Positions 3-21,276 of a DNA stretch of 51,696 nucleotides are shown here, piece after piece. Position 1 is the first letter of the stretch. Each line of letters opens with the position of its first letter. The position numbers and the translations under genes were made by a program. Origin of the DNA: Vitrella brassicaformis CCMP3155 (taxonomy: Eukaryota > Protista > Chromerida); assembly GCA_001179505.1 (NCBI GenBank), contig CDMY01000561.1:1-51696 (forward strand), read 5' to 3'. Under the pieces are notes generated by a model. The model was not told where the DNA came from, did not search any database, and saw nothing but the letters and a program-made list of their open reading frames with translations.

Positions 3-3000
3 CTACCAACCATCGACCCAAGCAACGACAAGGCAGATGGAATCTCTCTCGCCGTCCACCATGCGACTGCTGTCCACGAAGGCGCACACGAGTGGAACCA
101 TCGTCATTTCCCGTGGGCTGACGTGCGTCATCCTGTGCTGGGCAAGCGGGCCGATGAGGAGGACTACGTGCGGTACGAGAGCACACTCCGCAAGGAGGTC
201 GGCGGGCTTCTGCAAGACCACGTGGTGCTTGGGAACGCCCTGATGCCCGGTGCTGCATCCAGTGCCACCCCATCAGCCAGCCAGTGATTGAGGAGGCAGG
301 CGCACACGAGTGGAATCATCGTCATTTCCCTTGGGCTGACGTGCATCATCCTGTGCTTGGCAAGCGGAGCGATGAGGCCGATTACGTGCGGTACGAGAGC
401 ACTCTCCGCAAGGAGGTCGGCGGGCTTCTGCAAGACCACGTGGTGCTTGGGAACGCCCTGATGCCCGGTGCTGGTTTCCTCGACATCCTGGCGGCGGCAG
501 GAGCGGCTGCAACCGAGAGGGCCCATGCGCCCGGGTCCAAGTCGCACACTGCGGCTATGGTGCACATGGAGGATGTGCTCTTCGAGCGGCCGCTGAGTGT
601 TCCCTCGAAGCCCGAAGAGTCCGGCAGTGCCCTTCCGTGCGTCCGCATTCAGGTCGACAAGAGCGCGGAGAGCGACTGCAGCCGCCCGCCCATGACGGTC
701 GAGATCCTTTCCAAGAGCCAGTCAGAGCAGTCCTTCGCGACGGTCGGGACGGGCCGCGTCGTCAGCATCGACCAGGCGCGCCCCGATGCGTCAGCAATGG
801 CGGTGTGTGCAGCCGAAGAGGAGCTCAAGAGTGCCAAGGAGCGATGCACCCGTGCTGCTGATCTGGAGCTGTTCTACGGCCAGCTGTCTCAGGTGGGACT
901 CCGCTACGGCCCCCGATTCCAGACCGTGAGCGACCTCCAGGATGGGAGCAGACAAGGTCTCTCTTGGGCGCTGCGACGCGTCTGAGAAGCTGTGGAGTCA
1001 CGTCAGGCTGGTCAAGCGGGACGAGATGGGAGCGACAATCGACTTAACCCTGCATGACAGCACGGGTCAGGTGCTGGCGGCCATCAAGCACCTCAACTTG
1101 CGCCAGATGGACGCGACGCCCGTCGCAGAGATCCCCAAGGAGCTTCTGTGGCACCTGGAGTGGCAACCAGCCCTCACCGACCAAACAACCACCTCGACAA
1201 ACGAGGAGGAGGAGGAGGAAGAGGAGGACGACAACCAGGAGGAGATAGAGGCACGCGAGAGCCAACCAACTGACACGCAAGAGGCAGAGTCAACTCCGCC
1301 CATGCGGTGCCTCGTCTTCGGCATGTCCTCCGAGCTCAAGAGTGACTTGGCCAGCAGTGGAGCAGAGGCCAGAGTCGGCCTTGGCCTGGCCCCCGAATCA
1401 AGGCTGCTGGCCTTCGGTGAGCTGCCCAGCGATTCCGAGCTGGAGGCTCTCTTGGCGGCCCAGGAAGATGAAGCGACGGGACGTCAGTATCTGTGGGATG
1501 CCATTCTGTACCTGGGAGGGCTGCTGAGGCGACAAGAGGCGAGCGAAGTCGACGTCCTGAACGAAGCACTTTGCCTGACGCAAGCGATGCTGGCGCTGGG
1601 TCGGAAGGTGCGGCAGAATGCTCCTCCGATGTGGCTCGTGACGTCTGGCGTCGCGCAGCCATCAGAGGAGCAGAGTGCGGCAGACCTCGACTTGGTGGCG
1701 CATGCGGGTCTGTGGGGCTTTGCCAAGAGCGCTCGATTGGAGCTGGAAGCCAACATCGGCAGACGAATCCAGCTTGGCTGTATCGACCTGCACACCGCTG
1801 GGTCTCATCAGGTGGACCCCTCGAGTGTGGCCTCGCTCATCGCAACCGTGCAGACGGAGAAGCGAAAGCCGCCGAATGCTTATGAGAGCGAGATCATGAC
1901 GCGTGGTGAGGCTGACAAGCCGAGCGTCCTCTACTCCCGCCTCAGGAAGTCGGCATTGCCTGTGAGAGGCGCCATGGAGCTGTTCTTGCCTCGCCGCGGA
2001 GCCCTGAGCAACCTGAAGCTTCGCCCACTGGCCGAAGCCTCGCGCATCGCCCCCCCTGCTGGCTGCGTGGAGGTGCGTGTGCGTGCGGTTGGTTTGAATT
2101 TCCGTGACGTGTTGAACGTGATGGGTCTGTATCCTGGTGACCCGGGTCCGCCTGGCGGCGATTGCTCGGGGACGGTCGTGAGTGTTGGAGCGGGTGTGAC
2201 GCATCTGAGTGTGGGCGATGATGTGTACGGTGTTGCACCCGGGTGTCTGCGGACGTATGTGGCCACGGATGCCCACTTGATGGCCATCAAGCCGGTGACC
2301 ATGTCGTTCGAGCAAGCCGCGGCGCTGCCAGTCGTCTTCGTCACGGTCCAAGTGGCCTTCAGGGAGCTCGCCAAGGTCACAAAGGGCGACAAGGTGCTCG
2401 TGCACGTGGCGACGGGAGGGGTGGGCTTGGCCGCTCTGCAGTACTGCCAGCAAGTGGGAGCGACCGTGTTTGCGACGGCCGGCAGTGAGGCGAAACGGGA
2501 CTACCTGCGCCAGACGTGTGGCGTCCAGTACGTGACCACATCGCGTGACGCCAAGCAGTTCAAGGAGGACATGCTGTCGTTCCTGGGGGGCGCCAGTAGT
2601 GGCAAGATCGATGTGGTCCTCAACTCGTTGATCGACGACTACATTCCCTTCTCTCTTGACCTCATGGCGCCCAACGGCCGCTTCATGGAGCTCGGCAAGC
2701 GCGAGACCTGGACCAAGGACAAGGTCGCCGAAAAGAGGCCCGACGTCATGTACGAGCTCATCGCCGTCGATCGGTTCATTGAGGAGAACCCCTTGAGGGT
2801 CGAGACCATCCTGCAGGACATCTCCGCCGGAATCGCTGCCAGGAGGCTGCAACCTCTTCCCCTGCACGTCTTCGACATGACCAGTCAAGACCAGCATGTG
2901 GGCGGTGTTGCCGGCTTCCGCTTCCTGCAGCGGGCGCAGCACATCGGCAAAGTTGTTCTGAGCGTGCCGACCGCCATCCAAGTCGAAACCGTCGCTTCTT

Positions 3001-6000
3001 CACAGGGCAGCGGCAGCTACGTCATCACCGGCGGCTCTGGCGGCTTGGGTCTCTTGCTGGCCGACTGGCTGGTACATGAAGGAGCTAAGCACATCGTTTT
3101 GCTGTCGAGACGAGGCAAGCCGTCAGCTGCTGTGGCTGCCACGGACCTTTGGCAACGCCTCACGGCAGCGTCCAACACATCCTTCAAGGTCCACTCCGTT
3201 GCCGCGGATGTGTCCAGGAAGGACGACTGCGAGAGGTTGTTCCAGCAAGTGGCGGAGAGCATCCCTGATGCGCCAGTCAAGGGCATCTTCCACGCCGCTG
3301 GTGTGCTGGAAGACGCAACGCTCAACAACCAGACGAAGGACAACATCACTAAAGTCTACCTGCCAAAGGTGAGACGAGCACATGGATCCACTGGGGTCTT
3401 GACATCAATCTCTTGCGTATTTGTTGCCTTAGGTCATGGGAGCCTGGTATCTTCACGAGCTATCCCAGACATTGCCTCTGCATCTCGACCACTTCATGCT
3501 GTTTTCATCGGTGGCGTCCCTTCTGGGCAACTTCGGCCAGAGCAACTACTCGGCAGCCAATGCCTGCCTTGACGCACTGACGGTCCATCGACGGTCGAGG
3601 GGACTGGCCGCTCAGTCCATTCAGTGGGGCCCGTGGGTTGAACAAGGCATGGCGGCCAAGCTCCGCCAGCATCTCGACAAGGTGGGCATCAAGGGCATCT
3701 CCAACGAGCTGGGACTACGCGTCATGGGCGACGTCATGAGCCACCAGCTGGCGACGGCCAGCCGGCCAGGAGTGGGCGTCATCGGTTGTCAGGCCCTCAA
3801 CTGGCCAGTCTTCTTGAGGCGCCACGAGACGGTGCCGAGCCTCTTTGCCGACATCCCCATGGCATCCACGGCAGCCGCTGACGGCAAGGGCAGCCTCGAT
3901 CTGAGCAGGATGAGCAGAGACGATCTGGGAGACATCCTGTGCTCACTCGCCGAGGAGGTGGCAGGGTCCGGTGAGAGGCCGGAGCCCGATGCGCCTCTGA
4001 TGGAGCTCGGGTTCGACTCGCTCGGCGCCGTCGAGTTCCGCAACGCCATCGCAGACATGACAGGCGTCAAGCTGCCACAGTCCCTGGTGTTCGAGAATCC
4101 CAGCATCAACGACCTCGCCGACTTCATCCTGAGCAGAGCGGCAACCAAGAGCAAAGACGAGCCGTCAGATGAGGCGGCGGAGGGAGCTGACGGGCAGAAG
4201 ACCACCGCAGAAGCCATCGCGAGCGTCACTGGCATCCCGGCCGACATCATGTCGCTGACGGTGGAGGAGTGGCTGCGCTTCACCTTCTCTAAGAACAAGC
4301 GCTACTTCCAGTACGTCGACGCCTTCGAGAACAAATACCCGTCAGTCGACGCCATGTCTAAGGAGAGCGACGTCCACGGAGCCATAAGGTCCCTCAACGT
4401 CAAGAATGCAGACGATACGCAGCTGATCGCGGCCGCGTGGGAAAGGCTGATCAGCGCTGACACCACGGAGGCCAAGCCTGGCAGGAAGCAGAAGACCCCA
4501 GACGTGTACGAGGACATGAAGATGCTGTCCAGTTGGCTCGACGCCGAGATTGCAGGACGCATCAAGTCAGCTCTTCCACCGGTGCCCCAGAGCCAGGTTC
4601 GCCGTGTCCTGCTGACCGGCGTGACGGGCTTTGTGGGTCGCTGCCAACTGGTGACACTGCTCGAGAGGGAGAAGCCTGGCAAGCTCTTCGTGTACTGCCT
4701 CGTGCGCGCCTCTAGCGTCGAGCACGGCCTGCAGCGAATCCGTCAGGCCTGCACTGAGGCGAGGATATGGCGGGAGGAGTTTACCGAGAGGATCGAGGTG
4801 CTGCCTGGCGACTTCACGCTTCAGGACTTCGGACTGGGAGAGGAGAAATTCCAAGAGCTGTGCCGCTCGATCGACATGGTAAGGAACAAATGGCAACCAT
4901 GTCGATGGTAGGGTCATAATCCTCTGTTGCGTTCTGTCTTCAGGTTTACCACACCGGTGCCGATGTGAATCTGATGAACAACTACGCCAAGCTGCGTCAC
5001 ACCAACACTCTGGCCATGAAGGGCGTCATCCGCCTCTGCGCAACACACAGACTCAAGGAGCTCCACCACACGTCGACCCTTGGCGTCTTCCCGGTACCCA
5101 TACACACACACGAGTGTCGCCTATCCTATGTGTGGATGCATCTGTATCATCCATCATGTGTGTGATGCGAATGGACCTTTAGGCGTTCTACGCGGCGTTC
5201 GGTCAAGAGTTCAGCCGCATGAGCCCCATCATGGAGGGTGTCTCGCCGGACGAGAAGGAGATGAAGAAGTTCTTCCCTCCAACCGCCATCGGGTACCCCT
5301 GGAGCAAGTGGGCCACCGAGCAGACACTCCGCAAGGCCCGCGACATGGGCCTTCCTCTCTGCATCTACCGCCTGCCCAACACCAACCTCAGCCTGCGCAC
5401 GGGCTTCACCAACCGCACGGACTACCTCACGGCCCTCATGGTGTCCTCCATGCAAGAGGGCATGTTCCCTATCGGAGCCACAGCTGCGCCATTCACACCC
5501 GCAGGTGAGAATCGAATCGCACGTCAAAATGCTTCCCGCGCTGGGACAGCCAGCACAGATAGATTCTCTCACTATCTGGTTTGTGCCTTGTTCGTTCGTT
5601 CTGTGCAGACACCATATCTGAGATGTTGGTTGAGGCGTCCTTCCTTGAGAATCGCAAGCACTGGTTCTACCACCTGGTGGATGCTACCGTCGTCACAAGG
5701 TCAGTCAGGCACCATGTCCACCCTAAGGCACGACAGCACTGGGACATTTTGTCTTCGCCCTGTTGTGTGTGCAGGCACGAGCTGGAGCGGTGGTCAGCTG
5801 ACATGGGCGTGAGCTATCGCGGTGTGCAGTACCAAGAGTTCCTCAATGCCGTCAAGGAGAGAGGCCGGGCCTCGCCGATCCATCGATTCGTACCACTCAT
5901 GCAGGTAAACAGTGAAAAAACGAATGGTGCAAGGAAGTAGGGGATACATTTGGTTGTTGTCCCGTTCAGCATTGGCGTCGGTATTGGTTTGACTCTGAGG

Positions 6001-7783
6001 AGCGGACCGAGCCGCTGCCAATCAGCAACAAACACATCTTCGAGGATCTGCCCAACTTCAAGTGGCCCAGTGGCCGCGACGTCTTCCAGGCATCCTTCAT
6101 GGTGAGGGAGGGAGACAGACATACCAGCTCACACACAGTCAGACTGACCTGGCTGGACGTGGTGCTTTTGCCCGCCTTCCTTCAGTACTCGTGCGAGGCT
6201 CGTTTCTTCATGCCCAACTCCAAGTCGATCGGGATGGTTGCCGATGACATGGTGGCACTGGCCAAGAAGAACGCGGGCCTCGACACACTGCCGCACGGGC
6301 TGCCTGGCGGCGACGCATTCTTCACCCAGCCCATCCGATCCCTCACGGACAGCGCCAGAGAGGACGTCAAGCTGAGCTTCTTCGGGCAGTTTGCACTCTC
6401 CCGGAGTGTGCACCAGCTGCTCAAGAACGCCCTCTTCCTCCAGGCCATGGAGCAGCAGCACCCCGACATCCTGCGCCAGCCCATCTCTCAGCCGCTCGTC
6501 ATCGTGGGGCCTGATGTGCTCAGCACCACCTTCCTCCAGCTGCTCATGGCACAGGACCCGTCGAATCGCGTGCCACGCTTCTGCGAGGTCAACTTCCCCT
6601 ACGGCGAAGACGGATCTTTCAGACCGGAACCACTACCCAATAACGCTCCGTGGGAACAGGTACGCATGCACATCATACCACCCAGCAATGGGGCCTGGGC
6701 CGATCGATCGATGATTCGTGTGCGTGTCTTGTTTTGTTTCGTCCTGCAGGATCCTCGGATGGCGGCCGCCCAGCGGCTGCTCGAGTCCTCTCCCATGCTG
6801 GGCAACGAGTACACGTCCATCCTCCCTCGCAGCGGCGACATGCCCGACGACGACACGGCCATATTCGAACACTCACTCCGCGCACACACCTTCTGCATGG
6901 GGTATGGCGCGCCGTCGTATGGCGAGTGGCTCAAGGCGTCTGATGGCACGGAGATCAAGAAGGGCTATGCAATGCACAAGAGGTTCCTGCAGCACCTGCA
7001 GTGGCAGCGGGCGGGCGATCGGTGGGTGCTCAAGATGCCCGCACACATGCTGGCTCTTGACGCGCTCTTCGAGACCTACCCGGATGCACGGGTCATCTTC
7101 CTCCACAGGTGAGTGAGGATGGGAAGCCACACACATAGGAGATCTGTGGCATCCCTCTCATGTCTTCCTCTGCTGTTGATTTGCTTTGCCATTTCAGAGA
7201 CCCCAAGGTTGCCCTCGGACCTGTCTGCAAGATCGTCAGCTCTGTGCGCGAGAAGCTCATGGACGACGCTGACGTCACGGTGACGAGCCATCAGCAGGCG
7301 GAACTCATGGCCGAGATGGTCAACACGGCCGCCGCCTTCCGCAGGGACCACCCCGCACTGAAGGGCCGGTTCGTCGACGTGACGCATGACGCGCTTCTCC
7401 GCGACCCCGTCGGGACGCTCAAGAAGGTGTACCGCCAGTGTGGGCTGTCGATGTCTCGCCGCGCCTCCCACTCCATGTGGGAGTTCATCAACCAGCACCG
7501 CGACAAGCGAGACCAGCTCTTCAGACAGGTGGAGCCCCTCGACCAGTTTGGCATCGACGAGGACGAGCTGGACGAGGCCCTCCAGCCGTACCATGACAGC
7601 CGGCAGGTGCAGCAGGCGAGGCGGGGCTTCTCGCGTCTGCTGCCCACGTGCGGGGCCAACATGAGACGGCCACCGAGTCGAGGAGAGAGGCGGGGTCTCA
7701 CGCTGCCGTCGCTGCCGAGGCTGCCAAGCATGCCCAAACGGCGCAGCGAATCGTACCGACAGGACAAGTCGAGCCTGCAGTAG
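3..7783 (+). CDS. Type I modular polyketide/fatty-acid synthase, 3' part (5' end outside window): DH(disrupted)-ER-KR-ACP-SAM-like-thioester reductase-sulfotransferase-like; multi-exon
   Basis: DH HxxxGxxxxP (QDHVVLGNALMPGAG); ER (RAVGLNFRDV, HVATGGVGLAA, HIGKVVL); KR (ITGGSGGLG, HAAGVLED, FSSVAS..GQSNYSAAN); ACP (GFDSLGAVEFRN); reductase (LLTGVTGFVG, GYPWSKW); ST-like (WVLKMPAH, IFLHR/DP). In-frame GT-AG introns include 3369-3432, 4879-4943 and 6102-6185. Stop TAG at 7781-7783. The frame is disrupted near 255 and 941. Confidence 0.92.
81..473 (+). repeat. Diverged direct repeat of 175 bp (81-255 and 299-473, period 218 bp) covering the post-AT linker and DH N-terminus
   Basis: Manual alignment gives 10 mismatches, all in the first 105 bp; the last 70 bp are identical. 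Confidence 0.95.
4600..5903 (+). other. Thioester reductase (NAD-binding/extended SDR) release domain of the PKS
   Basis: RRVLLTGVTGFVG, VYCLVRA, EVLPGDFT, VYHTGADVN..NYAKLRHTN, HTSTLGVF, GYPWSKWATE (YxxSK), IYRLP. Confidence 0.88.
6186..7783 (+). other. C-terminal sulfotransferase-like domain (bacterial Sulfotransfer_3/Stf-type) of the PKS
   Basis: QPISQPLVIVG..STTFLQLLMAQDP..R, PDDD..IFEHS, HKRFLQHLQWQ..RWVLKMPAH..LDALFETYPDARVIFLHRDP, FVDVTHDALLRDPVGTLKKVY, H.Y-like tail region LDQFGID. Confidence 0.8.
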
Positions 7784-9298
7784 TCATGTAGGTAGAGAGA
7801 GGTGCTGAGGTGCTGTAGAGTGTAGGTCTGTCTGTAGTGTTTAAGAAAATTTCTCTGTAGTGTCACATGCATACATCACATCAACCAGTCTGACGTCAAG
7901 GGAGGGAGGGCATTCCACGGGTTGGGTTGGGTTGGGTTGGGTGATCACTGTGTTGTCGTGTAGCCATCCACCCACCTCCCTGTGCACACGGCTAAGCCAT
8001 TCATATATTAGCCGTCAGGCGTGCCATGCGGTCTGTTTCTGTCCTTCTCTGTGGCCTATGTTTTTCGTACTTTAGTTTCGTATGCATGGATAATTCTGTT
8101 CGTGTGTCCCATCTGTCTGTCTGTCTGTCTGTGTGTCTGTTTGGCTCAATGAAGGTGGGTTCGGCAGAAAGGTATCTGAGTATTGGTCCGCTCAGAGGAG
8201 AGCACGCTCGGTGGATGTGGACTGCGAACGCGGGGGGAGCACGATGGTTTCAGTTTGTGAGCAGTGAGTTGATGTCGTGTTGTTTTGAGGCAATCGCACC
8301 TTCCGTCCCCTGTGCTGAAATCGCAGCCATGTATGGACGAAGCTGACGAAGCTTCCGACACCTTTTGCCATACCATCCACCAGCTGTTCTGTGCTCTCGT
8401 GTGTGGTGTGCCTGCCTGATACGTATGTGACGCGTGTGTGTGGTGTGTACAGAGTGTGTGGCGTGTGTGATGTGTACGTGCTGTGTGTGGTGTCTGCATG
8501 TCGTGCCGGCCGGCCATGGGCTGCATCGGTGATTGTGATGGTGCATCGCCCGGGTGGCCACACCAGGCCTGTGGGGGTGTCTCTTGAGCGTCCATGCCAC
8601 GGTTGCTGATCGATATTGTTATTTGTGCTGAATGCCGGTACATGACCAGCCAGCTCATACATAGGGCATCCATCCGTTCTGCATTCCGCCCTGCGTGTTG
8701 CCTCTATCTCGTTGTGCTAGACCACACTGCCAACCGCTCGCCGTACTCACCACCCACAATGCGAGCAACTCTGCACGGTGGTGTCTGTCTGTCTTGTGAC
8801 CGTGCTTTTTCCCATTGTCTTTATCGTGCTGTGTCGTACGGTGTTCTTTTTACTTATTTATTGGCGGTGCGAGTAAAGGGCAAAGGAGGGAGGACACGCA
8901 AGCAACACATGTGAATATGAAGATATGACGGGCGTGAGCTGGCTCGACTGTTGTTGACCTGACCTGAGCTGACGGGATGCGATCATTTTTCTCTGAGGAT
9001 AGATCCATGAGATGCAGCCGTTCGGTGGACGCATCGCATCACCCACCCCACCCCACCCTTGCATGTCAGGTGTGTGGGAAAATTTATCTGTGGATATCCG
9101 TGCCATGTATGTGTGTGTGTGTGTGCGTCTTGTGCGTGCTGTGTCTGCGTCTTGTGCGCGCGTGTCGTGTGTGCGTGAAGAGACGGACAATTCTGTGATT
9201 TTCGTGGCGCACTTGTCGTTCGTCGCCAGGAGGGCACAAAGACTGTGAGCTGACGGCATGCCTTGTAAGTGAAGCCAACGACTTATTACCCATCCATA

Positions 9299-11134
9299 TC
9301 AACACAGAGAGACAAAATCCCATACACTCCTTGGCGCATCACATGCTGCAGTGCCGTGCTCATCATCACAGTCAAGGTAGGGCGGCAGCAAGTCCATGCT
9401 CTTCAAGTACGCTCGATTGTGGAACTTCGACAGATGTCTCATCCCACTGTCGCACAGTATCGTCACAAGCACTGCTCCGCTGTCTCGCGGAATCGCCCCT
9501 GACATGACCGCTTTCACCACACCGACGCAGTTGCATGAAGCGGACGAGCCCACAAACAGGCCTGACAACACAACACAATGCAAGACAGCTGGGTGCAGGT
9601 ATGCGACAGACACACACAGGCCCCTGACCGTCTTGCCGCAGAAGGTATTGGCTCATGGCGACTGCCTCTTCGTCAGTGACCCTAAACGCGTCGACAAGGG
9701 ACAGCAGCTGATGACCCCGCAGAGACCAGTGTCGGCCCGCCTCCTTCCCTCCCTCCGTCTCTCGGTCCGTCCCTCCCTCACCTGAATGCCTCGTCGATGA
9801 AGGGCACCGCCAGCTCGAAGTTCCTCGTCAATCGATTGAGCCCAATGCCCTCTGCGATGGTGTCAAAGATGATCCGTCTGCGGTACCCCTCTCTGTCCTC
9901 CCTCGTCCACAACACACCAAGACTCGCCTGCATCATACATGTGGGTGAGACAACAACCAGACACACACCGGGGTGTGTGTGTGTGTGTGTGTGATGGGCG
10001 TCCTTTCGAAATATCGCACCTTTCCTGCGAGTGCTGATCCTGGGGGGTCCGCAAGGATGATCTTCACATCAGGGTTGTGAGCTGCAGTGCACATAACACT
10101 CATTTCGCATTCAGCACCCACATAGCAGGCAACAGACTGCTGTACCTTTCAGTCTTGCGCCGACACCTCCGATTGTCCCGCCAGTTCCTGCTGCAGACAC
10201 GAACGCGTCCACCTTGCCGTTGGTCTGCCGCAGGATCTCCTCCCCTGTGCCGCTGAAGTGAGCCAAGAAATTGGCCGTGTTCTCAAACTGATTCGCAAAG
10301 AATCCCCTGCCTGCGTTGATGGATGCACACAGACACACGGACAGCGCACGGGCAGACTGTGGTCTTGTTCCACGGTCCCGCTGTCTCACCTCACCTTCAA
10401 GGGCTGGATCATCCGCGGCGTTCTCGGCCGCCCTGCAGTAGTGTGATGGATCAGCCATCGATACGTTCTTGCAGTGAGCCACCCGGGCCCCCAGACTCCG
10501 CAGCGTGTCGGTCTTCTCCTGCGCCTGGTCGTCAGGCATGAATATGCAGCACTGATACTTCTTGGCGTTGCACACCAGCGCCAGGCTGATGCCAGTGGAG
10601 CCGCTGGTGCCCTCAAACACACAGCCGCCTGTATGCCAGACAGACAGACAGAGCATACACACAGGCAATGAATGAATGCATCGCACCCTTCCTTCATGGC
10701 CCTGTCTGTCCTCACCTTGCCTGAGGCGTTCCTCTCTTTCTGCCGTCTCGATGATTGACTTGGCCACACGGTCCTTGACGCTCCCTCCCGGATTCAGGAA
10801 TTCACACTTGGCGAGCACTGTACATCCAAGATCTCTCGACAGGCTGCAGCCAGGCAACACACTTGTGTGAATGAGTCTACATGTCAGATGGCTGTGCCCA
10901 CCTCTCGATTCTGATCAGCGGCGTGTTGCCAATGAGGCCCAGAAACCCACCCGGAATGTCGTCAGGCAAGCATCCTCGTCCCGTGAGCCGCCGCAGCCAC
11001 GAGCGGATGAGTCCAATCCATGATGTGACGCGACGGAGGCCATCGGGCCTCACGAGAAAGACGGCAGATGCGAGAAGTGCTCCAGCGGCACCGAGGCGCC
11101 AGACGTGCTTCGCTGGATCGCCAGAGATCTCCAT
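9299..11134 (-). CDS. Cysteine synthase-like PLP enzyme (N-terminally anchored cysteine synthase 2/MCY1-like subfamily), about 8 exons
   Basis: LIGNTPLIRI, KCEFLNPGGSVKDR (PLP Lys), EGTSGSTGISLA, NQFENTAN, AAGTGGT, DTIAEGIG, LFVGSS, VTILCDSG.RHLSKF; hydrophobic N-terminus; exons join in frame at GT-AG sites. Confidence 0.9.
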
Positions 11135-17786: not shown

Positions 17787-20700
17787 CTACGATGTCCCGC
17801 TCTCGTCGAAGACTATCGTATCGCTGTCATGAAGGTCCCACCACCTGCCTCCGTTCCGCAACGCAGTCGCAGTCATCCCACCAAACACATCCTCTCTCCC
17901 CCACAAGCGGTGCAGCAGACCTTCCTGCGTCCGGTCGTGTGGACACTCACGCGGCCCAGAGACCACCCCCTCCCTGTACATCCGCCCGCCGTCATGCACC
18001 TTCAAGTGGCACCTGCCATTGCCCTCATCGAATGAGAAGAACCGACAGCTGCTGTCTTGTGCGCAGAGGGCCTGGCACGATGCAGCGGAGTCGGCTTGCA
18101 GTGGGGGGGTGTTGGGCACGTCGAGGCGAGCCATGAAGACGTCGTGCTCGAAGCACTCTATCCTGACTGGCTGCTGGCCCAGGAATGTCATGGTTACATT
18201 CTCAGCTGACGCGCCATCGGCCTGCAGCATCCTCCCTGCGCCCATTCGGACAAAAGACACACACACACTTGTGGACTTGCCAGCATCTCCGTGTGGACGT
18301 GTCAGCATCTTTGGACGTACGCCTTACTGTTTGTATGTCCTAGTGGTGTTAAGAGGGTCCGCGAGGGTATGCCCTTCGACCCATCGTGAAGCAGTGGAAC
18401 CGCTCTGAAATAGCAGGTGGCCTCGTGTAGGCAGTGTGCCCGTTGCTGCATGGTTCCGTCGACCTTGAGCTTTTCCTCAAACTTGGTCTTGTTCAATGTG
18501 GCGAGGTGGTGCTTGGGTGGGCTCGACGGACCGCCGTACACCTCCCACCTCTTGACATTCGTCACCCCGTTCCTGCAAAGCACAGCAATCGAGTCTGTCT
18601 CCTTGGTGTGTCTGGCTGCATTCTCCCTACCAGCTGAAGTGGATTGTGGGCGCCTTCTCCCCATGCGGCCGTGCCACCATCAGCGGAGGGTCTTTGGACC
18701 TGCCCCACCAGGGCAGCTTGTGCGTCTGGAAGGCTCCATTCTGCTGAATGAACCGGAGCTCCAACACGACCTTGCCCTCTCGCGTCACCTCTGTATAGAA
18801 AGGGATGTTGACTTTGCCTGCGCCGCCCCAGTTGATGGCCGCATTGCCGTTGGGGAGTGCCTGCATACTCCCCATTGCAAAGCCATACGGACCTGACAGG
18901 ACGCAGAACACGGACAGGAAGCAGTCGACGTCTCTTGCACGTCGTCTGTCTGTCTGTCCACACTCACCTTTGTGTGACCGAATCTCCCTGGCGGTGTTGT
19001 TGTCTTCATCGACCTGGTAGACGACTGCCTGAGACCACCAAGTGTCCTGGATGAGCGGGGTGGTGGAGTGGTGGTTGTCGAACATGGTGAGGACGTTGCT
19101 GTCATCGATGCGTGTGTGGTGCTGGAACTTGAAGGGCGACACGCCCTTGCCCTTCTCGACCTCCATGGTGCTGAATGCAGGGCTGCGGTTGGCCCCGCCT
19201 AGCATCCACGCCACCTCGCCTCTCATGTCGATCTTCAGCACCTGCACACATGGCATGGCATAGGTATGGCATAGGTATGTGTGTGAGCCAGGCCAGGCGG
19301 CGGGCATATTATTCTGCCCACCGTAAGTGGTCTGAGTGAGAGCAGGATGCCCCCGTCCCGTGTGAATGACACCGAGTTGGGATGGGTGGTGTCGATGACG
19401 GAGTAGTCGGCCTTGCCCAGCAGCTGGTCCAGCTTGTACTTGCCCCTGATGAGCACCGGTATCGGCCACTGATCGATGGCACGCCACTCGAGCAGCACGT
19501 CGCCGTTCTTGTCGACCATTTGCGTCACGGCTGTGTCGACCATGAGCACCTTTGGCATGTTGGCTGCCTTGTCCTTGGTGAAGTGGTGCAGGTGAAATGT
19601 CTGCCTGTCGTAGATGATGAACAGGCGGGTGCCGTCCTCCCTGATGGCCACATCGTGCTGGTCAGCCATGTGCCTGTAAGACAGACATGATATGGCCAGA
19701 GAGATGAGATGCACACCCGCCACGGGTGTGTATATCGTGTGTGTGTGGCATTGGTCTGTTTGTGCTACCCGTGGGCGGCCTGGTGCCTCTCGATGGGGTG
19801 GTAATGGTGGTTCATCTCTATCCACTCACGGCTGGGTCGCTCACCGCCCATCACACGACTGACAAACAAACCTCATTGCAGCATCCCGCCTTGGCCCCTG
19901 CCTTCCCCCTCTCCCGCTCACCTGTCTTTCCTCTCGAGCTGGTCGAACAGCAGCATGTTGCCGCGCCCGCTGGTCCGAAACACACGCTGGCGCTTGTTGG
20001 AGGCGTACCTTCGCCAAAAGACCGGCTGGCCGTTGCTGTCGACGATCGTCAGGAAGGGCCGTTGGTAGTCTGGACGCATCGTGAACTGATCCACGAGGGA
20101 GAGCCACCATATCCTCCCCTTCTCGATTTTGTCTGGGTCGCCAGACGCCTGTGTGACCTCGAAGTGGGGGTAATCGCGCGGAAGGGTGGCGAAGTAGCGT
20201 GTGGGAAACCTCTTGAAATCATGGCCGTCTGCATCCGCCTGCGGCAATGGCCACTCTGACGGCTCCCTCGCGCCGTCGTCGTCCACTTTGGCGTCGCGGT
20301 CAGGATCACTGTCTTCCAGCTGTTCCGAGTCGAAGGGGTTCTCGTCGTCAGGCGTATCAATGAAGAAATCCCATTCTTCCGCCTCAAAGGGGCCGTAGTC
20401 CCACCGCTCGAGCATCGCCTGCCTGGATTGCTGCCACTGGCTGTTGCCTTTGTTGCTGGCCCACTCAACTCCCGCTTCCATCTCCACCTGCTGTTGCCCC
20501 CCTGTGGGCAAGTAGGCCTTCTGCGGCCTGTCGGTCACCACAAACGACCACGCCAGCCCTCTGTATGCCTTGCCGTCTTTGTCCACCACGCCAGGGGCCA
20601 TTTTGACGGTCACCTTCTCATCTGGATGGAACATCCGCTGTGGCCTGAACGTGATGGTTGAGCCGTCAGCTGCCACGTGCAGGTTGCCGCTGATGTCGCC

Positions 20701-21276
20701 GCTGCGCTCTCCCCTCACCCATAGACGGTCACGAATGGACGATGGCTCGACCTTGATGCCGTCCTTCAGCCGAACCGCGATGGTCGTTGCGGGTGACACG
20801 AAGAAAGCGAAAGGCCTCGGATGCACATACTGAAAGTCGCCGAGCCTCTCATGGCCCTTCTTCTTTGCAGTGACCATCATTTGGCCGTTGTCAGCAGCCG
20901 CTGTTGCGGCCGTGTCACTGAGGCCGAACTGGTCCCAGGATGACTCGCTGAAAGCCTTCGGTGTGACTTCAAGAAACTCGATTGGCTTGCCGTCGTCGTC
21001 AGTCAGGGCCTCCGTCTTTGCGCGACCACTCAGCTCGGCCTCAAGCAACGACAGATACGCATCTCGTTCTTTCTCCTCTTCTTCTGCAGGTGGCTCGTCG
21101 TCGAAAACATTGCTGAAGGCAGCCGTGGATGCGGAAGGGTCATCGTCCCTCGCACTTGCTCGAAGGTTGGCAAGCTGAGAGTCCTCACCTGTTTCTTGAC
21201 CTTTCACGTCGCTGAGGACTACTAGCAACACCTCGAGAAAGAACCCCAAAACAAACGCCTCTCTGTGTTTTCTCAT
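17787..21276 (-). CDS. Secreted arylsulfate sulfotransferase (ASST, PAPS-independent) with Ig-like (Big_5-type) N-domain and C-terminal PAN/Apple domain
   Basis: Signal peptide (AFVLGFFLEVLLVVLSDVKG); P..FFVSPATTIAVR..V.GERSG..G..TITFRP..F.PDEKVTV; QHDVAI, THPNSV, LLSLR, FQHHTR, MFDN, GSMQALPNGN..INWG, SWNGAT-like region; Apple motif CFEHD..SAASCQALCAQDSSCRFFSF..CHLK..VSGPREC. Confidence 0.85.

What the first reader, a model, noticed from the sequence alone, without database searches (positions are those of the whole stretch)
4600..7783. PKS ends in thioester reductase followed by a sulfotransferase-like domain
Seen: after the last ACP come a reductase domain and then a bacterial Sulfotransfer_3-type domain, joined in frame by canonical introns. 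Established: R domains release aldehydes or primary alcohols, and protist and apicomplexan type I synthases can end in R. The best-known PKS-embedded sulfotransferase (CurM/olefin synthases) has the order ACP-ST-TE. Inference: R-then-ST is a different arrangement that could make a reduced alkyl alcohol and sulfate it (alkyl-sulfate lipid).
Basis: partly seen in the sequence, partly recalled or inferred. Interest (0 to 1): 0.75.

Follow-up and report, generated by a model that had tools for sequence, protein, structure and literature searches.

The report
Synthase tail: reductase plus degenerate sulfotransferase
The end of a giant lipid-building enzyme gene of the alga Vitrella brassicaformis does fuse a chain-releasing reductase to a sulfotransferase-shaped domain in one spliced message, but this ending was noted in parasites and sponge bacteria in 2013, and this copy has lost residues that normally hold the sulfate donor, so it probably does not sulfate its product.

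Summary
Observation confirmed. On the + strand a fully reducing type I PKS/FAS module (DH-ER-KR-ACP) is followed by a thioester reductase (R, NAD_binding_4) and a Sulfotransfer_3 domain. They are joined in frame over nine exons to a stop at 7781-7783. Seven of the eight introns in 4600-7783 appear as exact GT..AG joints in two RNA-like public runs and not in two DNA-like runs. These include the two introns between R and ST.

The arrangement is neither rare nor new. All 18 long relatives tested end in R then Sulfotransfer_3, and 13 of them also show the ACP. They come from Chromera, other Vitrella genes, gregarines, Rhytidocystis and Cardiosporidium. Della Sala et al. 2013 described R+ST in sponge-symbiont SwfB and coccidian FAS and proposed an alkyl sulphate product. 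No biochemical test was found.

What is particular here is the ST-like domain. It lacks residues invariant in 115 bacterial homologues: the 5'-PSB loop reads GPDVLSTT instead of GlPRtGTT, H183 is Leu, and the 3'-PB Ser is Pro. It still evolves under purifying selection (dN/dS 0.13) and a close proxy models as a confident Stf1/Stf9-type fold.

Most likely this copy releases a reduced chain and the ST-like domain has a non-catalytic or altered role. This scan already reported the same tail on four paralogous pieces of this genome.

The parts
284..3368 (+). Upstream part of the last PKS/FAS module: DH, ER, N-terminal part of KR. The gene runs off the window's left end. There is at least one frame change near 942-985 that I did not resolve.
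   Evidence: Pfam PKS_DH_N/PS-DH, ADH_N/ADH_zinc_N and KR. tblastn of paralog P0272.
3369..3432 (+). Intron (GT..AG, phase 0)
   Evidence: Sequence read. The junction ..LPK|VMGAWY.. matches paralog P0121. It lies outside the stretch laid with reads.
3433..4878 (+). Exon: KR C-terminal part, ACP (about 3934-4128), linker, R domain N-terminus with the GVTGFVG nucleotide-binding motif (about 4612-4640)
   Evidence: Pfam KR, PP-binding and NAD_binding_4. Best solved match of the R N-terminus is MxaA 4u7w, 9.7e-16.
4879..4943 (+). Intron (GT..AG, phase 0), supported by homology only
   Evidence: Sequence. The junction IDM|VYHTGADVN matches P0272 and P0121. RNA-like contigs have no depth at 4782-4928.
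4944..5093 (+). R exon 2 (contains the ..HTSTLGVF.. Thr motif)
5094..5182 (+). Intron
   Evidence: GT..AG joint skipping 89 nt in X1 and X2, absent in X4 and X5.
5183..5504 (+). R exon 3. Catalytic YxxxK (GYPWSK): Tyr at 5294-5296, Lys at 5306-5308.
   Evidence: Pfam NAD_binding_4, profile positions 165-238. 100% identical to transcript-derived P0124/P0273.
5505..5608 (+). Intron (phase 1)
   Evidence: Joint skipping 104 nt in X1 and X2.
5609..5699 (+). R exon 4
5700..5774 (+). Intron (phase 2)
   Evidence: Joint skipping 75 nt in X1 and X2.
5775..5904 (+). R exon 5 (C-terminal subdomain)
5905..5969 (+). Intron (phase 0)
   Evidence: Joint skipping 65 nt in X1 and X2; the shorter side is only 21 nt.
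5970..6101 (+). Exon 6: conserved 44-aa segment between R and ST (HWRRYWFDSEERTEP...)
   Evidence: Conserved in paralogs P0001/P0121. Flanked by both RNA joints.
6102..6185 (+). Intron (84 nt, in frame and stop-free, but spliced)
   Evidence: Joint skipping 84 nt in X1 and X2.
6186..6659 (+). ST-like exon 7. The former 5'-phosphosulfate-binding loop GPDVLSTT lies at 6507-6530.
   Evidence: Family HMM 3.7e-29. PDB STF9 2z6v, 1.1e-05, aligning PRTGTT to DVLSTT. An RNA contig at 6434-6656 is identical to the window.
6660..6749 (+). Intron
   Evidence: Joint skipping 90 nt in X1 and X2.
6750..7108 (+). ST-like exon 8. Family-invariant His183 is replaced by Leu at 6822-6824. LKMPAH and YPDA are kept.
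   Evidence: Family HMM 6.5e-40. PDB STF1 2zq5, 2.9e-12. Column statistics.
7109..7197 (+). Intron (phase 2, splits the Arg codon of HRDP)
   Evidence: Joint skipping 89 nt in X1 and X2.
7198..7783 (+). ST-like exon 9 and stop. The 3'-phosphate motif reads RDPKVALGP, with Pro (7220-7222) where the family has an invariant Ser. A basic Ser/Pro/Arg-rich tail of roughly 50-80 aa follows the ST-like domain.
   Evidence: Family HMM 1.6e-21. Pfam Sulfotransfer_3, profile positions 129-214. RNA contigs at 7195-7521 and 7495-7913 are colinear with the genome.

Best explanation
This is the 3' end of a Vitrella brassicaformis type I fatty-acid/polyketide synthase gene. Its last, fully reducing module (DH-ER-KR-ACP) hands a saturated acyl chain to an intact MxaA-like thioester reductase. 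The reductase releases the chain as an aldehyde or primary alcohol. The C-terminal domain descends from the Stf1/Stf9-type (Sulfotransfer_3) sulfotransferase that ends many chromerid and apicomplexan synthases. In this paralog group it has lost key PAPS-binding residues, while the fold is kept under purifying selection. It therefore most likely no longer transfers sulfate from PAPS. It probably serves a non-catalytic role, for example holding or handing on the hydrophobic product, or supporting the reductase. Shown here: the domains, their order, the splicing, the motif losses, the selection and the fold. Inferred: the chemistry of release and the loss of sulfotransferase activity.
For: Domains and order come from Pfam. 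Splicing: seven exact GT..AG joints occur in RNA-like runs and not in DNA-like runs. Transcript-derived Vitrella proteins P0124/P0273 run from R into ST in one ORF.

The reductase looks intact. GVTGFVG, STLG and YPWSK are present, and the best solved match is MxaA 4u7w.

The ST-like domain was compared with 115 bacterial homologues. Residues that are 98-100% conserved in them are changed here: R120 to V, G122 to S, H183 to L, E192 to D and S283 to P. Other invariants are kept (G117, K250, H254, H274, R275, P277). Most apicomplexan R-ST tails and the Vitrella paralog CEL94036.1 keep GLNR(S/T)GTT...H...E...HRDP...S.

A Lys/Arg in the 5'-PSB loop and a Ser in the 3'-PB motif are general PAPS-contacting residues of sulfotransferases (PMC3733922).

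Comparison with paralog CEM36688.1 gives dN/dS of 0.13 for the ST-like exons and 0.11 for R. The former loop has drifted again between the two paralogs (STT against GNA; 3 of 13 exon-7 changes in 8 residues, P=0.025).

The AF2 model of the 92%-identical proxy P0273 has pLDDT 92.3. Its best fold matches are STF9 and STF1.
Against: No enzyme of this family or of any R-ST tail has been assayed, so inactivity is inferred from motifs alone. Several conserved residues remain: K250, H254, R275 and E143. By its spacing from the loop, E143 may be the catalytic base; that is my recollection of TPST2, not tested here. Strong purifying selection is also what an active enzyme would show. A different residue could in principle replace the lost Arg. 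The structure model is of a close relative, not of the window's exact protein.
Confidence: 0.6

Rival explanations
1. The ST domain is active. R reduces the acyl-ACP to a primary alcohol and the fused ST sulfates it with PAPS, giving a long-chain alkyl sulfate.
For: The same R-ST logic was proposed for SwfB and coccidian FAS (PMC3908369). The domain is expressed, is under purifying selection, folds confidently as a sulfotransferase and keeps K250, H254, R275 and E143.
Against: The 5'-PSB Arg (100% conserved in 115 homologues) is Val and the loop Gly is Ser. The 3'-PB Ser (100%) is Pro and H183 (100%) is Leu. The closest paralog has drifted further in the same loop, to GNA, and has RNP for RDP. 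That is the pattern expected for a site no longer used. A canonical paralog (CEL94036.1) exists in the same genome and could supply the sulfating function.
Confidence: 0.27
2. The ST-like domain has acquired a different catalytic activity. Examples would be another donor or acceptor, or a role in product hydrolysis or transfer.
For: Purifying selection persists despite loss of PAPS motifs. Several chromerid R-ST tails carry differently remodelled loops (GFDRASVM, GVARVAGQ, GHPRAAGS), which suggests diversification rather than one dead end.
Against: No new conserved motif was identified, and the remodelled loops differ from each other. There is no precedent known to me in this fold for the Stf type.
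Confidence: 0.08
3. The ST-like part is a decaying remnant without function.
For: Hallmark residues are lost.
Against: dN/dS is 0.13 over 391 codons. The frame is intact across three exons, all introns are spliced in RNA-like runs, and the model is confident.
Confidence: 0.03
4. R and ST are two separate genes that only appear joined.
For: The ORF 6099-7112 starts with an ATG, and no single contig spans the whole stretch.
Against: Spliced joints at 5905-5969 and 6102-6185 link R exon 5, exon 6 and ST exon 7 in frame. Transcript-derived proteins and the annotated paralog model span R and ST. All 18 long homologues tested show the same fusion.
Confidence: 0.02

Closest known systems
R-ST tail of apicomplexan/chromerid type I FAS/PKS1 (Toxoplasma, Eimeria; here also Gregarina, Selenidium, Rhytidocystis, Cardiosporidium, Chromera) and SwfB of sponge symbionts
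   Same: The thioester reductase is followed directly by a Sulfotransfer_3 domain after the last ACP. The ST domains of the fusions form one clade apart from the stand-alone bacterial sulfotransferases sampled (SH-aLRT 100). The architecture was noted in PMC3908369 and PMC3760245.
   Different: Most members keep GLNR(S/T)GTT, His183, Glu192 and the RDP...S Ser. This gene and its closest Vitrella paralogs do not. SwfB is a free-standing two-domain protein, not part of the synthase.
Mycobacterial sulfotransferases STF1 (2zq5) and STF9 (2z6v)
   Same: Closest solved structures by sequence and by fold (TM 0.70-0.85). They share the N-terminal helical extension and the LK.P.H and YPDA...HRDP blocks.
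   Different: They are stand-alone enzymes with a canonical PRTGTT loop. The window has DVLSTT at that place.
CurM / olefin synthase ACP-ST-TE off-loading
   Same: A sulfotransferase-fold domain is embedded at the end of a PKS.
   Different: The order and logic differ. There ST sulfates a beta-hydroxyl before TE-driven decarboxylative elimination. Here there is no TE and ST follows R. The fold match to 4gbm/4gox is weak (TM 0.28-0.43).
MxaA-type terminal reductases (myxalamid; 4u7w) and Cryptosporidium FAS1 R domain
   Same: The R domain follows the last ACP and has the SDR motifs. MxaA is the best solved match.
   Different: Those enzymes end at R. Here an extra domain of about 470 residues follows.

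Membership tests
PKS/FAS terminal thioester reductase (NAD_binding_4, MxaA type) | Placed directly after the last ACP | tested here: met
   PP-binding at ORF residues 167-231, NAD_binding_4 from residue 393 of the same exon.
PKS/FAS terminal thioester reductase (NAD_binding_4, MxaA type) | Rossmann GxxGxxG and catalytic Thr/Tyr/Lys | tested here: met
   GVTGFVG, HTSTLG and GYPWSK read in the translations. Alignment to MxaA and 8v1x.
PKS/FAS terminal thioester reductase (NAD_binding_4, MxaA type) | NAD(P)H-dependent reductive release of the acyl chain | not testable with these tools
   Needs an enzyme assay.
PAPS-dependent sulfotransferase, Sulfotransfer_3 (Stf1/Stf9 type) | Sequence and fold of the family | tested here: met
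   Pfam scores of 39.1 and 40.1 bits against a cut-off of 27. Family HMM 1e-21 to 1e-40 per exon. Proxy model TM 0.74/0.83 to 2z6v.
PAPS-dependent sulfotransferase, Sulfotransfer_3 (Stf1/Stf9 type) | 5'-phosphosulfate loop P(R/K)xGTT | tested here: not met
   GPDVLSTT. Arg is 115/115 and Gly 113/115 in homologues; here they are Val and Ser.
PAPS-dependent sulfotransferase, Sulfotransfer_3 (Stf1/Stf9 type) | 3'-phosphate motif RDP(x5)S | tested here: not met
   R, D and P are present. Ser (115/115 in homologues) is Pro here.
PAPS-dependent sulfotransferase, Sulfotransfer_3 (Stf1/Stf9 type) | Sulfuryl transfer from PAPS | not testable with these tools
   Needs binding and activity assays.
R-ST tail of apicomplexan/chromerid synthases and SwfB | Contiguous R then ST after the last carrier domain | tested here: met
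   The same R-then-ST tail is in all 18 long homologues tested, 13 of them with a detectable PP-binding domain upstream.
R-ST tail of apicomplexan/chromerid synthases and SwfB | ST domain belongs to the fusion clade | tested here: met
   Tree with proxies P0272/P0273: fusion clade 100*, chromerid subclade 98*.
CurM/olefin-synthase ACP-ST-TE | ST followed by a thioesterase, acting on a beta-hydroxyacyl-ACP | tested here: not met
   No TE is present. ST is the last domain before the stop at 7781-7783. The fold match to 4gbm/4gox is weak.

The most novel reading that the evidence does not exclude
Chromerid algae have turned the sulfotransferase at the end of their reduce-then-sulfate synthases into a family of conserved pseudo-sulfotransferase domains. 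These domains no longer bind PAPS but are kept as product-binding or regulatory modules. The canonical paralog (CEL94036.1) and the apicomplexan enzymes still make primary alkyl sulfates. That would give a natural active/inactive pair for finding out what the untested R-ST tail does, including in oocyst-forming parasites.
Probability: 0.35. Interest if true: 0.6.

Novelty: new variant of a known kind. Interest (0 to 1): 0.4.

Why it matters
The R-ST ending sits on the large type I synthases of chromerids and many apicomplexans. These include the very abundant oocyst PKS1 of Toxoplasma and Eimeria. The R-ST chemistry has never been tested, and alkyl sulfates escape standard lipid analysis (PMC3908369). 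Vitrella offers canonical and motif-degenerate versions side by side in a culturable, non-pathogenic alga. Comparing them could show whether these synthases make alkyl sulfates and what a conserved dead sulfotransferase domain is for. For this window alone the result is modest. The finding is real, but the idea is already published, it has been seen repeatedly in this genome, and its proposed product is less likely for this copy.

Tried and rejected
1. Separate R and ST genes. Rejected on the spliced joints, the spanning transcripts and the conserved fusion.

2. CurM-like chemistry. Rejected because there is no TE and the ST is of a different subfamily.

3. Decaying pseudogene domain. Rejected by dN/dS of 0.13 and the intact frame.

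4. Sequencing error at the degenerate loop. Rejected because RNA-like and DNA-like contigs are identical to the window over 6434-6656, and the paralog shares the Val.

5. Identity with an annotated protein. I looked for the window's own gene and found only close paralogs or mosaics. CEM36688.1/Vbra_483 is 85% identical in DNA. The transcripts P0124/P0273 are identical in R exons 3-5 but differ in the last exon.

6. Literature on a biochemical test of any R-ST tail, and on STF9 residue roles. Nothing usable was found in the held library.

7. A sulfur-metabolism gene cluster around the gene. Not convincing: only a PLP enzyme and an ASST-like gene lie some kb away.

8. Joined spliced protein. The exons were searched one by one by reference. 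The database proteins P0272/P0273 served as proxies for the tree and the fold.
Full report
**What is there.** The window is GC-rich (55-63%) and carries short GT-AG introns. On the + strand, Pfam finds PKS_DH, ER (ADH_N/ADH_zinc_N), KR, PP-binding (ACP), NAD_binding_4 (thioester reductase, R) and Sulfotransfer_3, in that order. Every match is above the curated cut-off. The gene runs off the left end of the window.

**Gene model.** I read the three frames and the DNA. The exons are ..-3368, 3433-4878, 4944-5093, 5183-5504, 5609-5699, 5775-5904, 5970-6101, 6186-6659, 6750-7108 and 7198-7783. All introns are GT..AG and their phases keep one frame. That exon encodes a conserved segment (HWRRYWFDSEERTEP...) also present in paralogs.

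**Transcript evidence.** Two RNA-like runs (X1, X2) carry exact GT..AG joints for 5094-5182, 5505-5608, 5700-5774, 5905-5969, 6102-6185, 6660-6749 and 7109-7197. Two DNA-like runs (X4, X5) carry none of these and cover the introns.
- The tool labels X1 and X2 only as "RNA?". The intron-exact joints, absent from the other runs, are what make them transcript data.
- The intron 4879-4943 lies in a hole of the RNA contigs. It rests on the junction IDM|VYHTGADVN, shared with paralogs.
- Contigs are short, so no single record spans R to ST.
- Transcript-derived Vitrella proteins P0124/P0273 (UniRef A0A7S1KGP7 and A0A7S1KFC6, 690 aa) run from R exon 3 through ST to a stop in one ORF. They are 100% identical to the window in exons 3-5.
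- RNA contigs at 7195-7521 and 7495-7913 are colinear with the genome, so the last exon is as read.

**Organism and paralogs.** The window belongs to Vitrella brassicaformis.
- It is 85% identical in DNA over 2420-7653, and 100% identical over 2057-2432, to contig CDMY01000900.1 of assembly GCA_001179505.1.
- That contig encodes CEM36688.1, a 2820-aa protein that matches in length Vbra_483.t1 of PMC7464705.
- That gene is a close paralog of the window's gene, not the same gene.
- Other Vitrella genes with the tail are CEL94036.1 (KR-ACP-R-ST) and CEL93275.1.
- A0A7S1KFH3 is a 494-aa ST-only transcript product. It shares a 100% identical block of about 155 aa with window exons 8-9.
- The mosaics point to gene conversion among paralogs, to chimeric transcript assemblies, or to both.

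**How common is the architecture?** A full HMMER scan with the ORF 6099-7109 found 3188 proteins at E <= 0.001. Many of the best hits are long.
- All 18 long hits scanned end in NAD_binding_4 then Sulfotransfer_3, and 13 of them also show a PP-binding (ACP) domain upstream.
- Named sources are Chromera velia (Cvel_3734, Cvel_19857, Cvel_17954), Gregarina niphandrodes, Gregarina sp. Poly1, Selenidium pygospionis, Rhytidocystis pertsovi, Cardiosporidium cionae, further single-cell transcriptomes, and two metagenome contigs.
- Della Sala et al. 2013 described SwfB (R + ST) of sponge symbionts. They noted the same contiguous domains at the end of two coccidian type I FAS, and proposed conversion of the carboxyl end to a primary sulphate (PMC3908369).
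- Bushkin et al. 2013 drew ST at the end of Toxoplasma/Eimeria PKS1 (PMC3760245).
- I found no biochemical test.

**What kind of sulfotransferase?** By sequence, the exons hit only STF9 of M. avium (2z6v) and STF1 of M. tuberculosis (2zq5) among solved structures. Instead I folded the 92%-identical database protein P0273:196-640 with 59 homologues. The model has pLDDT 92.3 and pTM 0.92. Foldseek puts STF9 and STF1 first (TM 0.70-0.85). CurM ST (4gbm) and olefin-synthase ST (4gox) reach only TM 0.28-0.43. In a tree, the ST domains of the R-ST fusions form one clade (SH-aLRT 100) apart from the stand-alone bacterial enzymes sampled. A chromerid subclade (98) holds both the canonical Vitrella paralog and all motif-degenerate ones.

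**The twist: degenerate cofactor motifs.** I built an HMM from 115 stand-alone homologues of about 340-480 aa and aligned each exon to it. The table lists the positions that are 98-100% conserved in those homologues.

| Family position | Conservation in 115 homologues | Residue in the window |
|---|---|---|
| R120, 5'-phosphosulfate loop (GlPRtGtt) | 115/115 | Val (loop reads GPDVLSTT, 6507-6530) |
| G122, same loop | 113/115 | Ser |
| H183 | 115/115 | Leu |
| E192 | 114/115 | Asp |
| S283, 3'-phosphate motif (HRDPxxxxxS) | 115/115 | Pro |
| G117, K250, H254, H274, R275, P277 | 100% | kept |
| E143 | 97% | kept |

- The Lys/Arg of the 5'-PSB loop and the Ser of the 3'-PB motif contact PAPS throughout the superfamily (PMC3733922; otherwise textbook knowledge).
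- Most apicomplexan R-ST tails, and Vitrella CEL94036.1, keep all of these residues.
- The window gene, CEM36688.1, CEL93275.1, three Chromera genes and some unnamed relatives carry variously remodelled loops. Only the window type lacks the Arg.
- The change is not an assembly error. RNA-like and DNA-like contigs agree with the window over the loop.

**Is the domain decaying?** No. Against CEM36688.1, dN/dS is 0.13 over 391 ST-like codons and 0.11 over 399 R codons, with dS about 0.3-0.4. Within exon 7, three of the 13 amino-acid differences fall in the eight residues of the former loop (STT against GNA; binomial P=0.025). The paralog also has RNP for RDP. The fold is constrained while the old cofactor site drifts.

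**Most likely mechanism.**
- DH-ER-KR make a saturated chain on the ACP. This follows from the domains and is inferred.
- The R domain has an intact nucleotide-binding motif and Thr/Tyr/Lys. Its nearest solved relative is MxaA, which I recall as a four-electron, alcohol-forming reductase. R releases the chain as an aldehyde or alcohol (inferred).
- The ST-like domain in this copy probably does not use PAPS. It is kept for another role, for example binding the hydrophobic product or supporting R (inferred, confidence about 0.6).
- The main rival is that the domain still sulfates the alcohol (about 0.27).
- Neofunctionalisation, decay and separate genes are minor alternatives.

**Relation to earlier notes of this scan.** After my own analysis I found four earlier follow-ups on paralogous pieces of this genome. 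They reached the same reading: the tail is real, it has been known since 2013, and some copies have lost cofactor residues. The scan has therefore found this before on other DNA.

**Verdict.** This is a new, motif-degenerate variant of a known but untested kind of synthase ending. Interest is moderate.

Noticed in passing
window 2057-2432 vs L001 3580-3955: A 376-bp block in the ER region is 100% identical to the paralogous contig CDMY01000900.1. The following 5.2 kb is only 85% identical, and the sequence upstream is not alignable at DNA level. This looks like a recent gene-conversion tract between PKS paralogs.
   Followed up: partly
window about 6985-7520 (exons 8-9): The Vitrella transcript product A0A7S1KFH3 (P0003, 494 aa, ST only, own N-terminus) is 100% identical to the window over about 155 aa. 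It is only about 55% identical upstream, and it follows the Vbra_483 tail downstream. Either conversion among paralogs or a chimeric assembly would explain this.
   Followed up: partly
window 7525-7591: In run X2 (a different organism label from X1) the transcript contig carries 7 listed base differences at 7525-7553 (10 over the whole contig). It then leaves the window at 7591 into the ...YSETRQIQTQ tail of the paralog. This looks like strain-specific or converted 3' ends.
   Followed up: no
window 5701-5764: Both DNA-like runs hold a contig that skips 62 bp inside intron 5700-5774 (ends CA..GT, not a splice). This is probably an indel allele or a paralog.
   Followed up: no
window 7018 and 4015: Contigs of DNA-like and RNA-like runs branch away from the window at these points (loose ends). 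This is as expected where near-identical paralogs share k-mers.
   Followed up: no
window 10111-10860 (-): An ORF with a PLP-dependent enzyme domain (PALP, 1.1e-38), of the cysteine synthase / threonine dehydratase type, lies 2.3 kb downstream of the synthase.
   Followed up: no
window 18627-19487 and 19918-21276 (-): An arylsulfate sulfotransferase-like (ASST, PAPS-independent type) ORF lies next to a bacterial Ig-like domain ORF. There is no evident link to the synthase.
   Followed up: no
window about 1220-1300: A long acidic low-complexity run (EEEEEEEEDDNQEE) lies in the linker after the DH domain.
   Followed up: no
window 942-985: The DH region changes frame between ORFs 284-985 and 942-3572. 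About 50 residues of the paralog are unmatched there. An intron or small exon here was not resolved.
   Followed up: no
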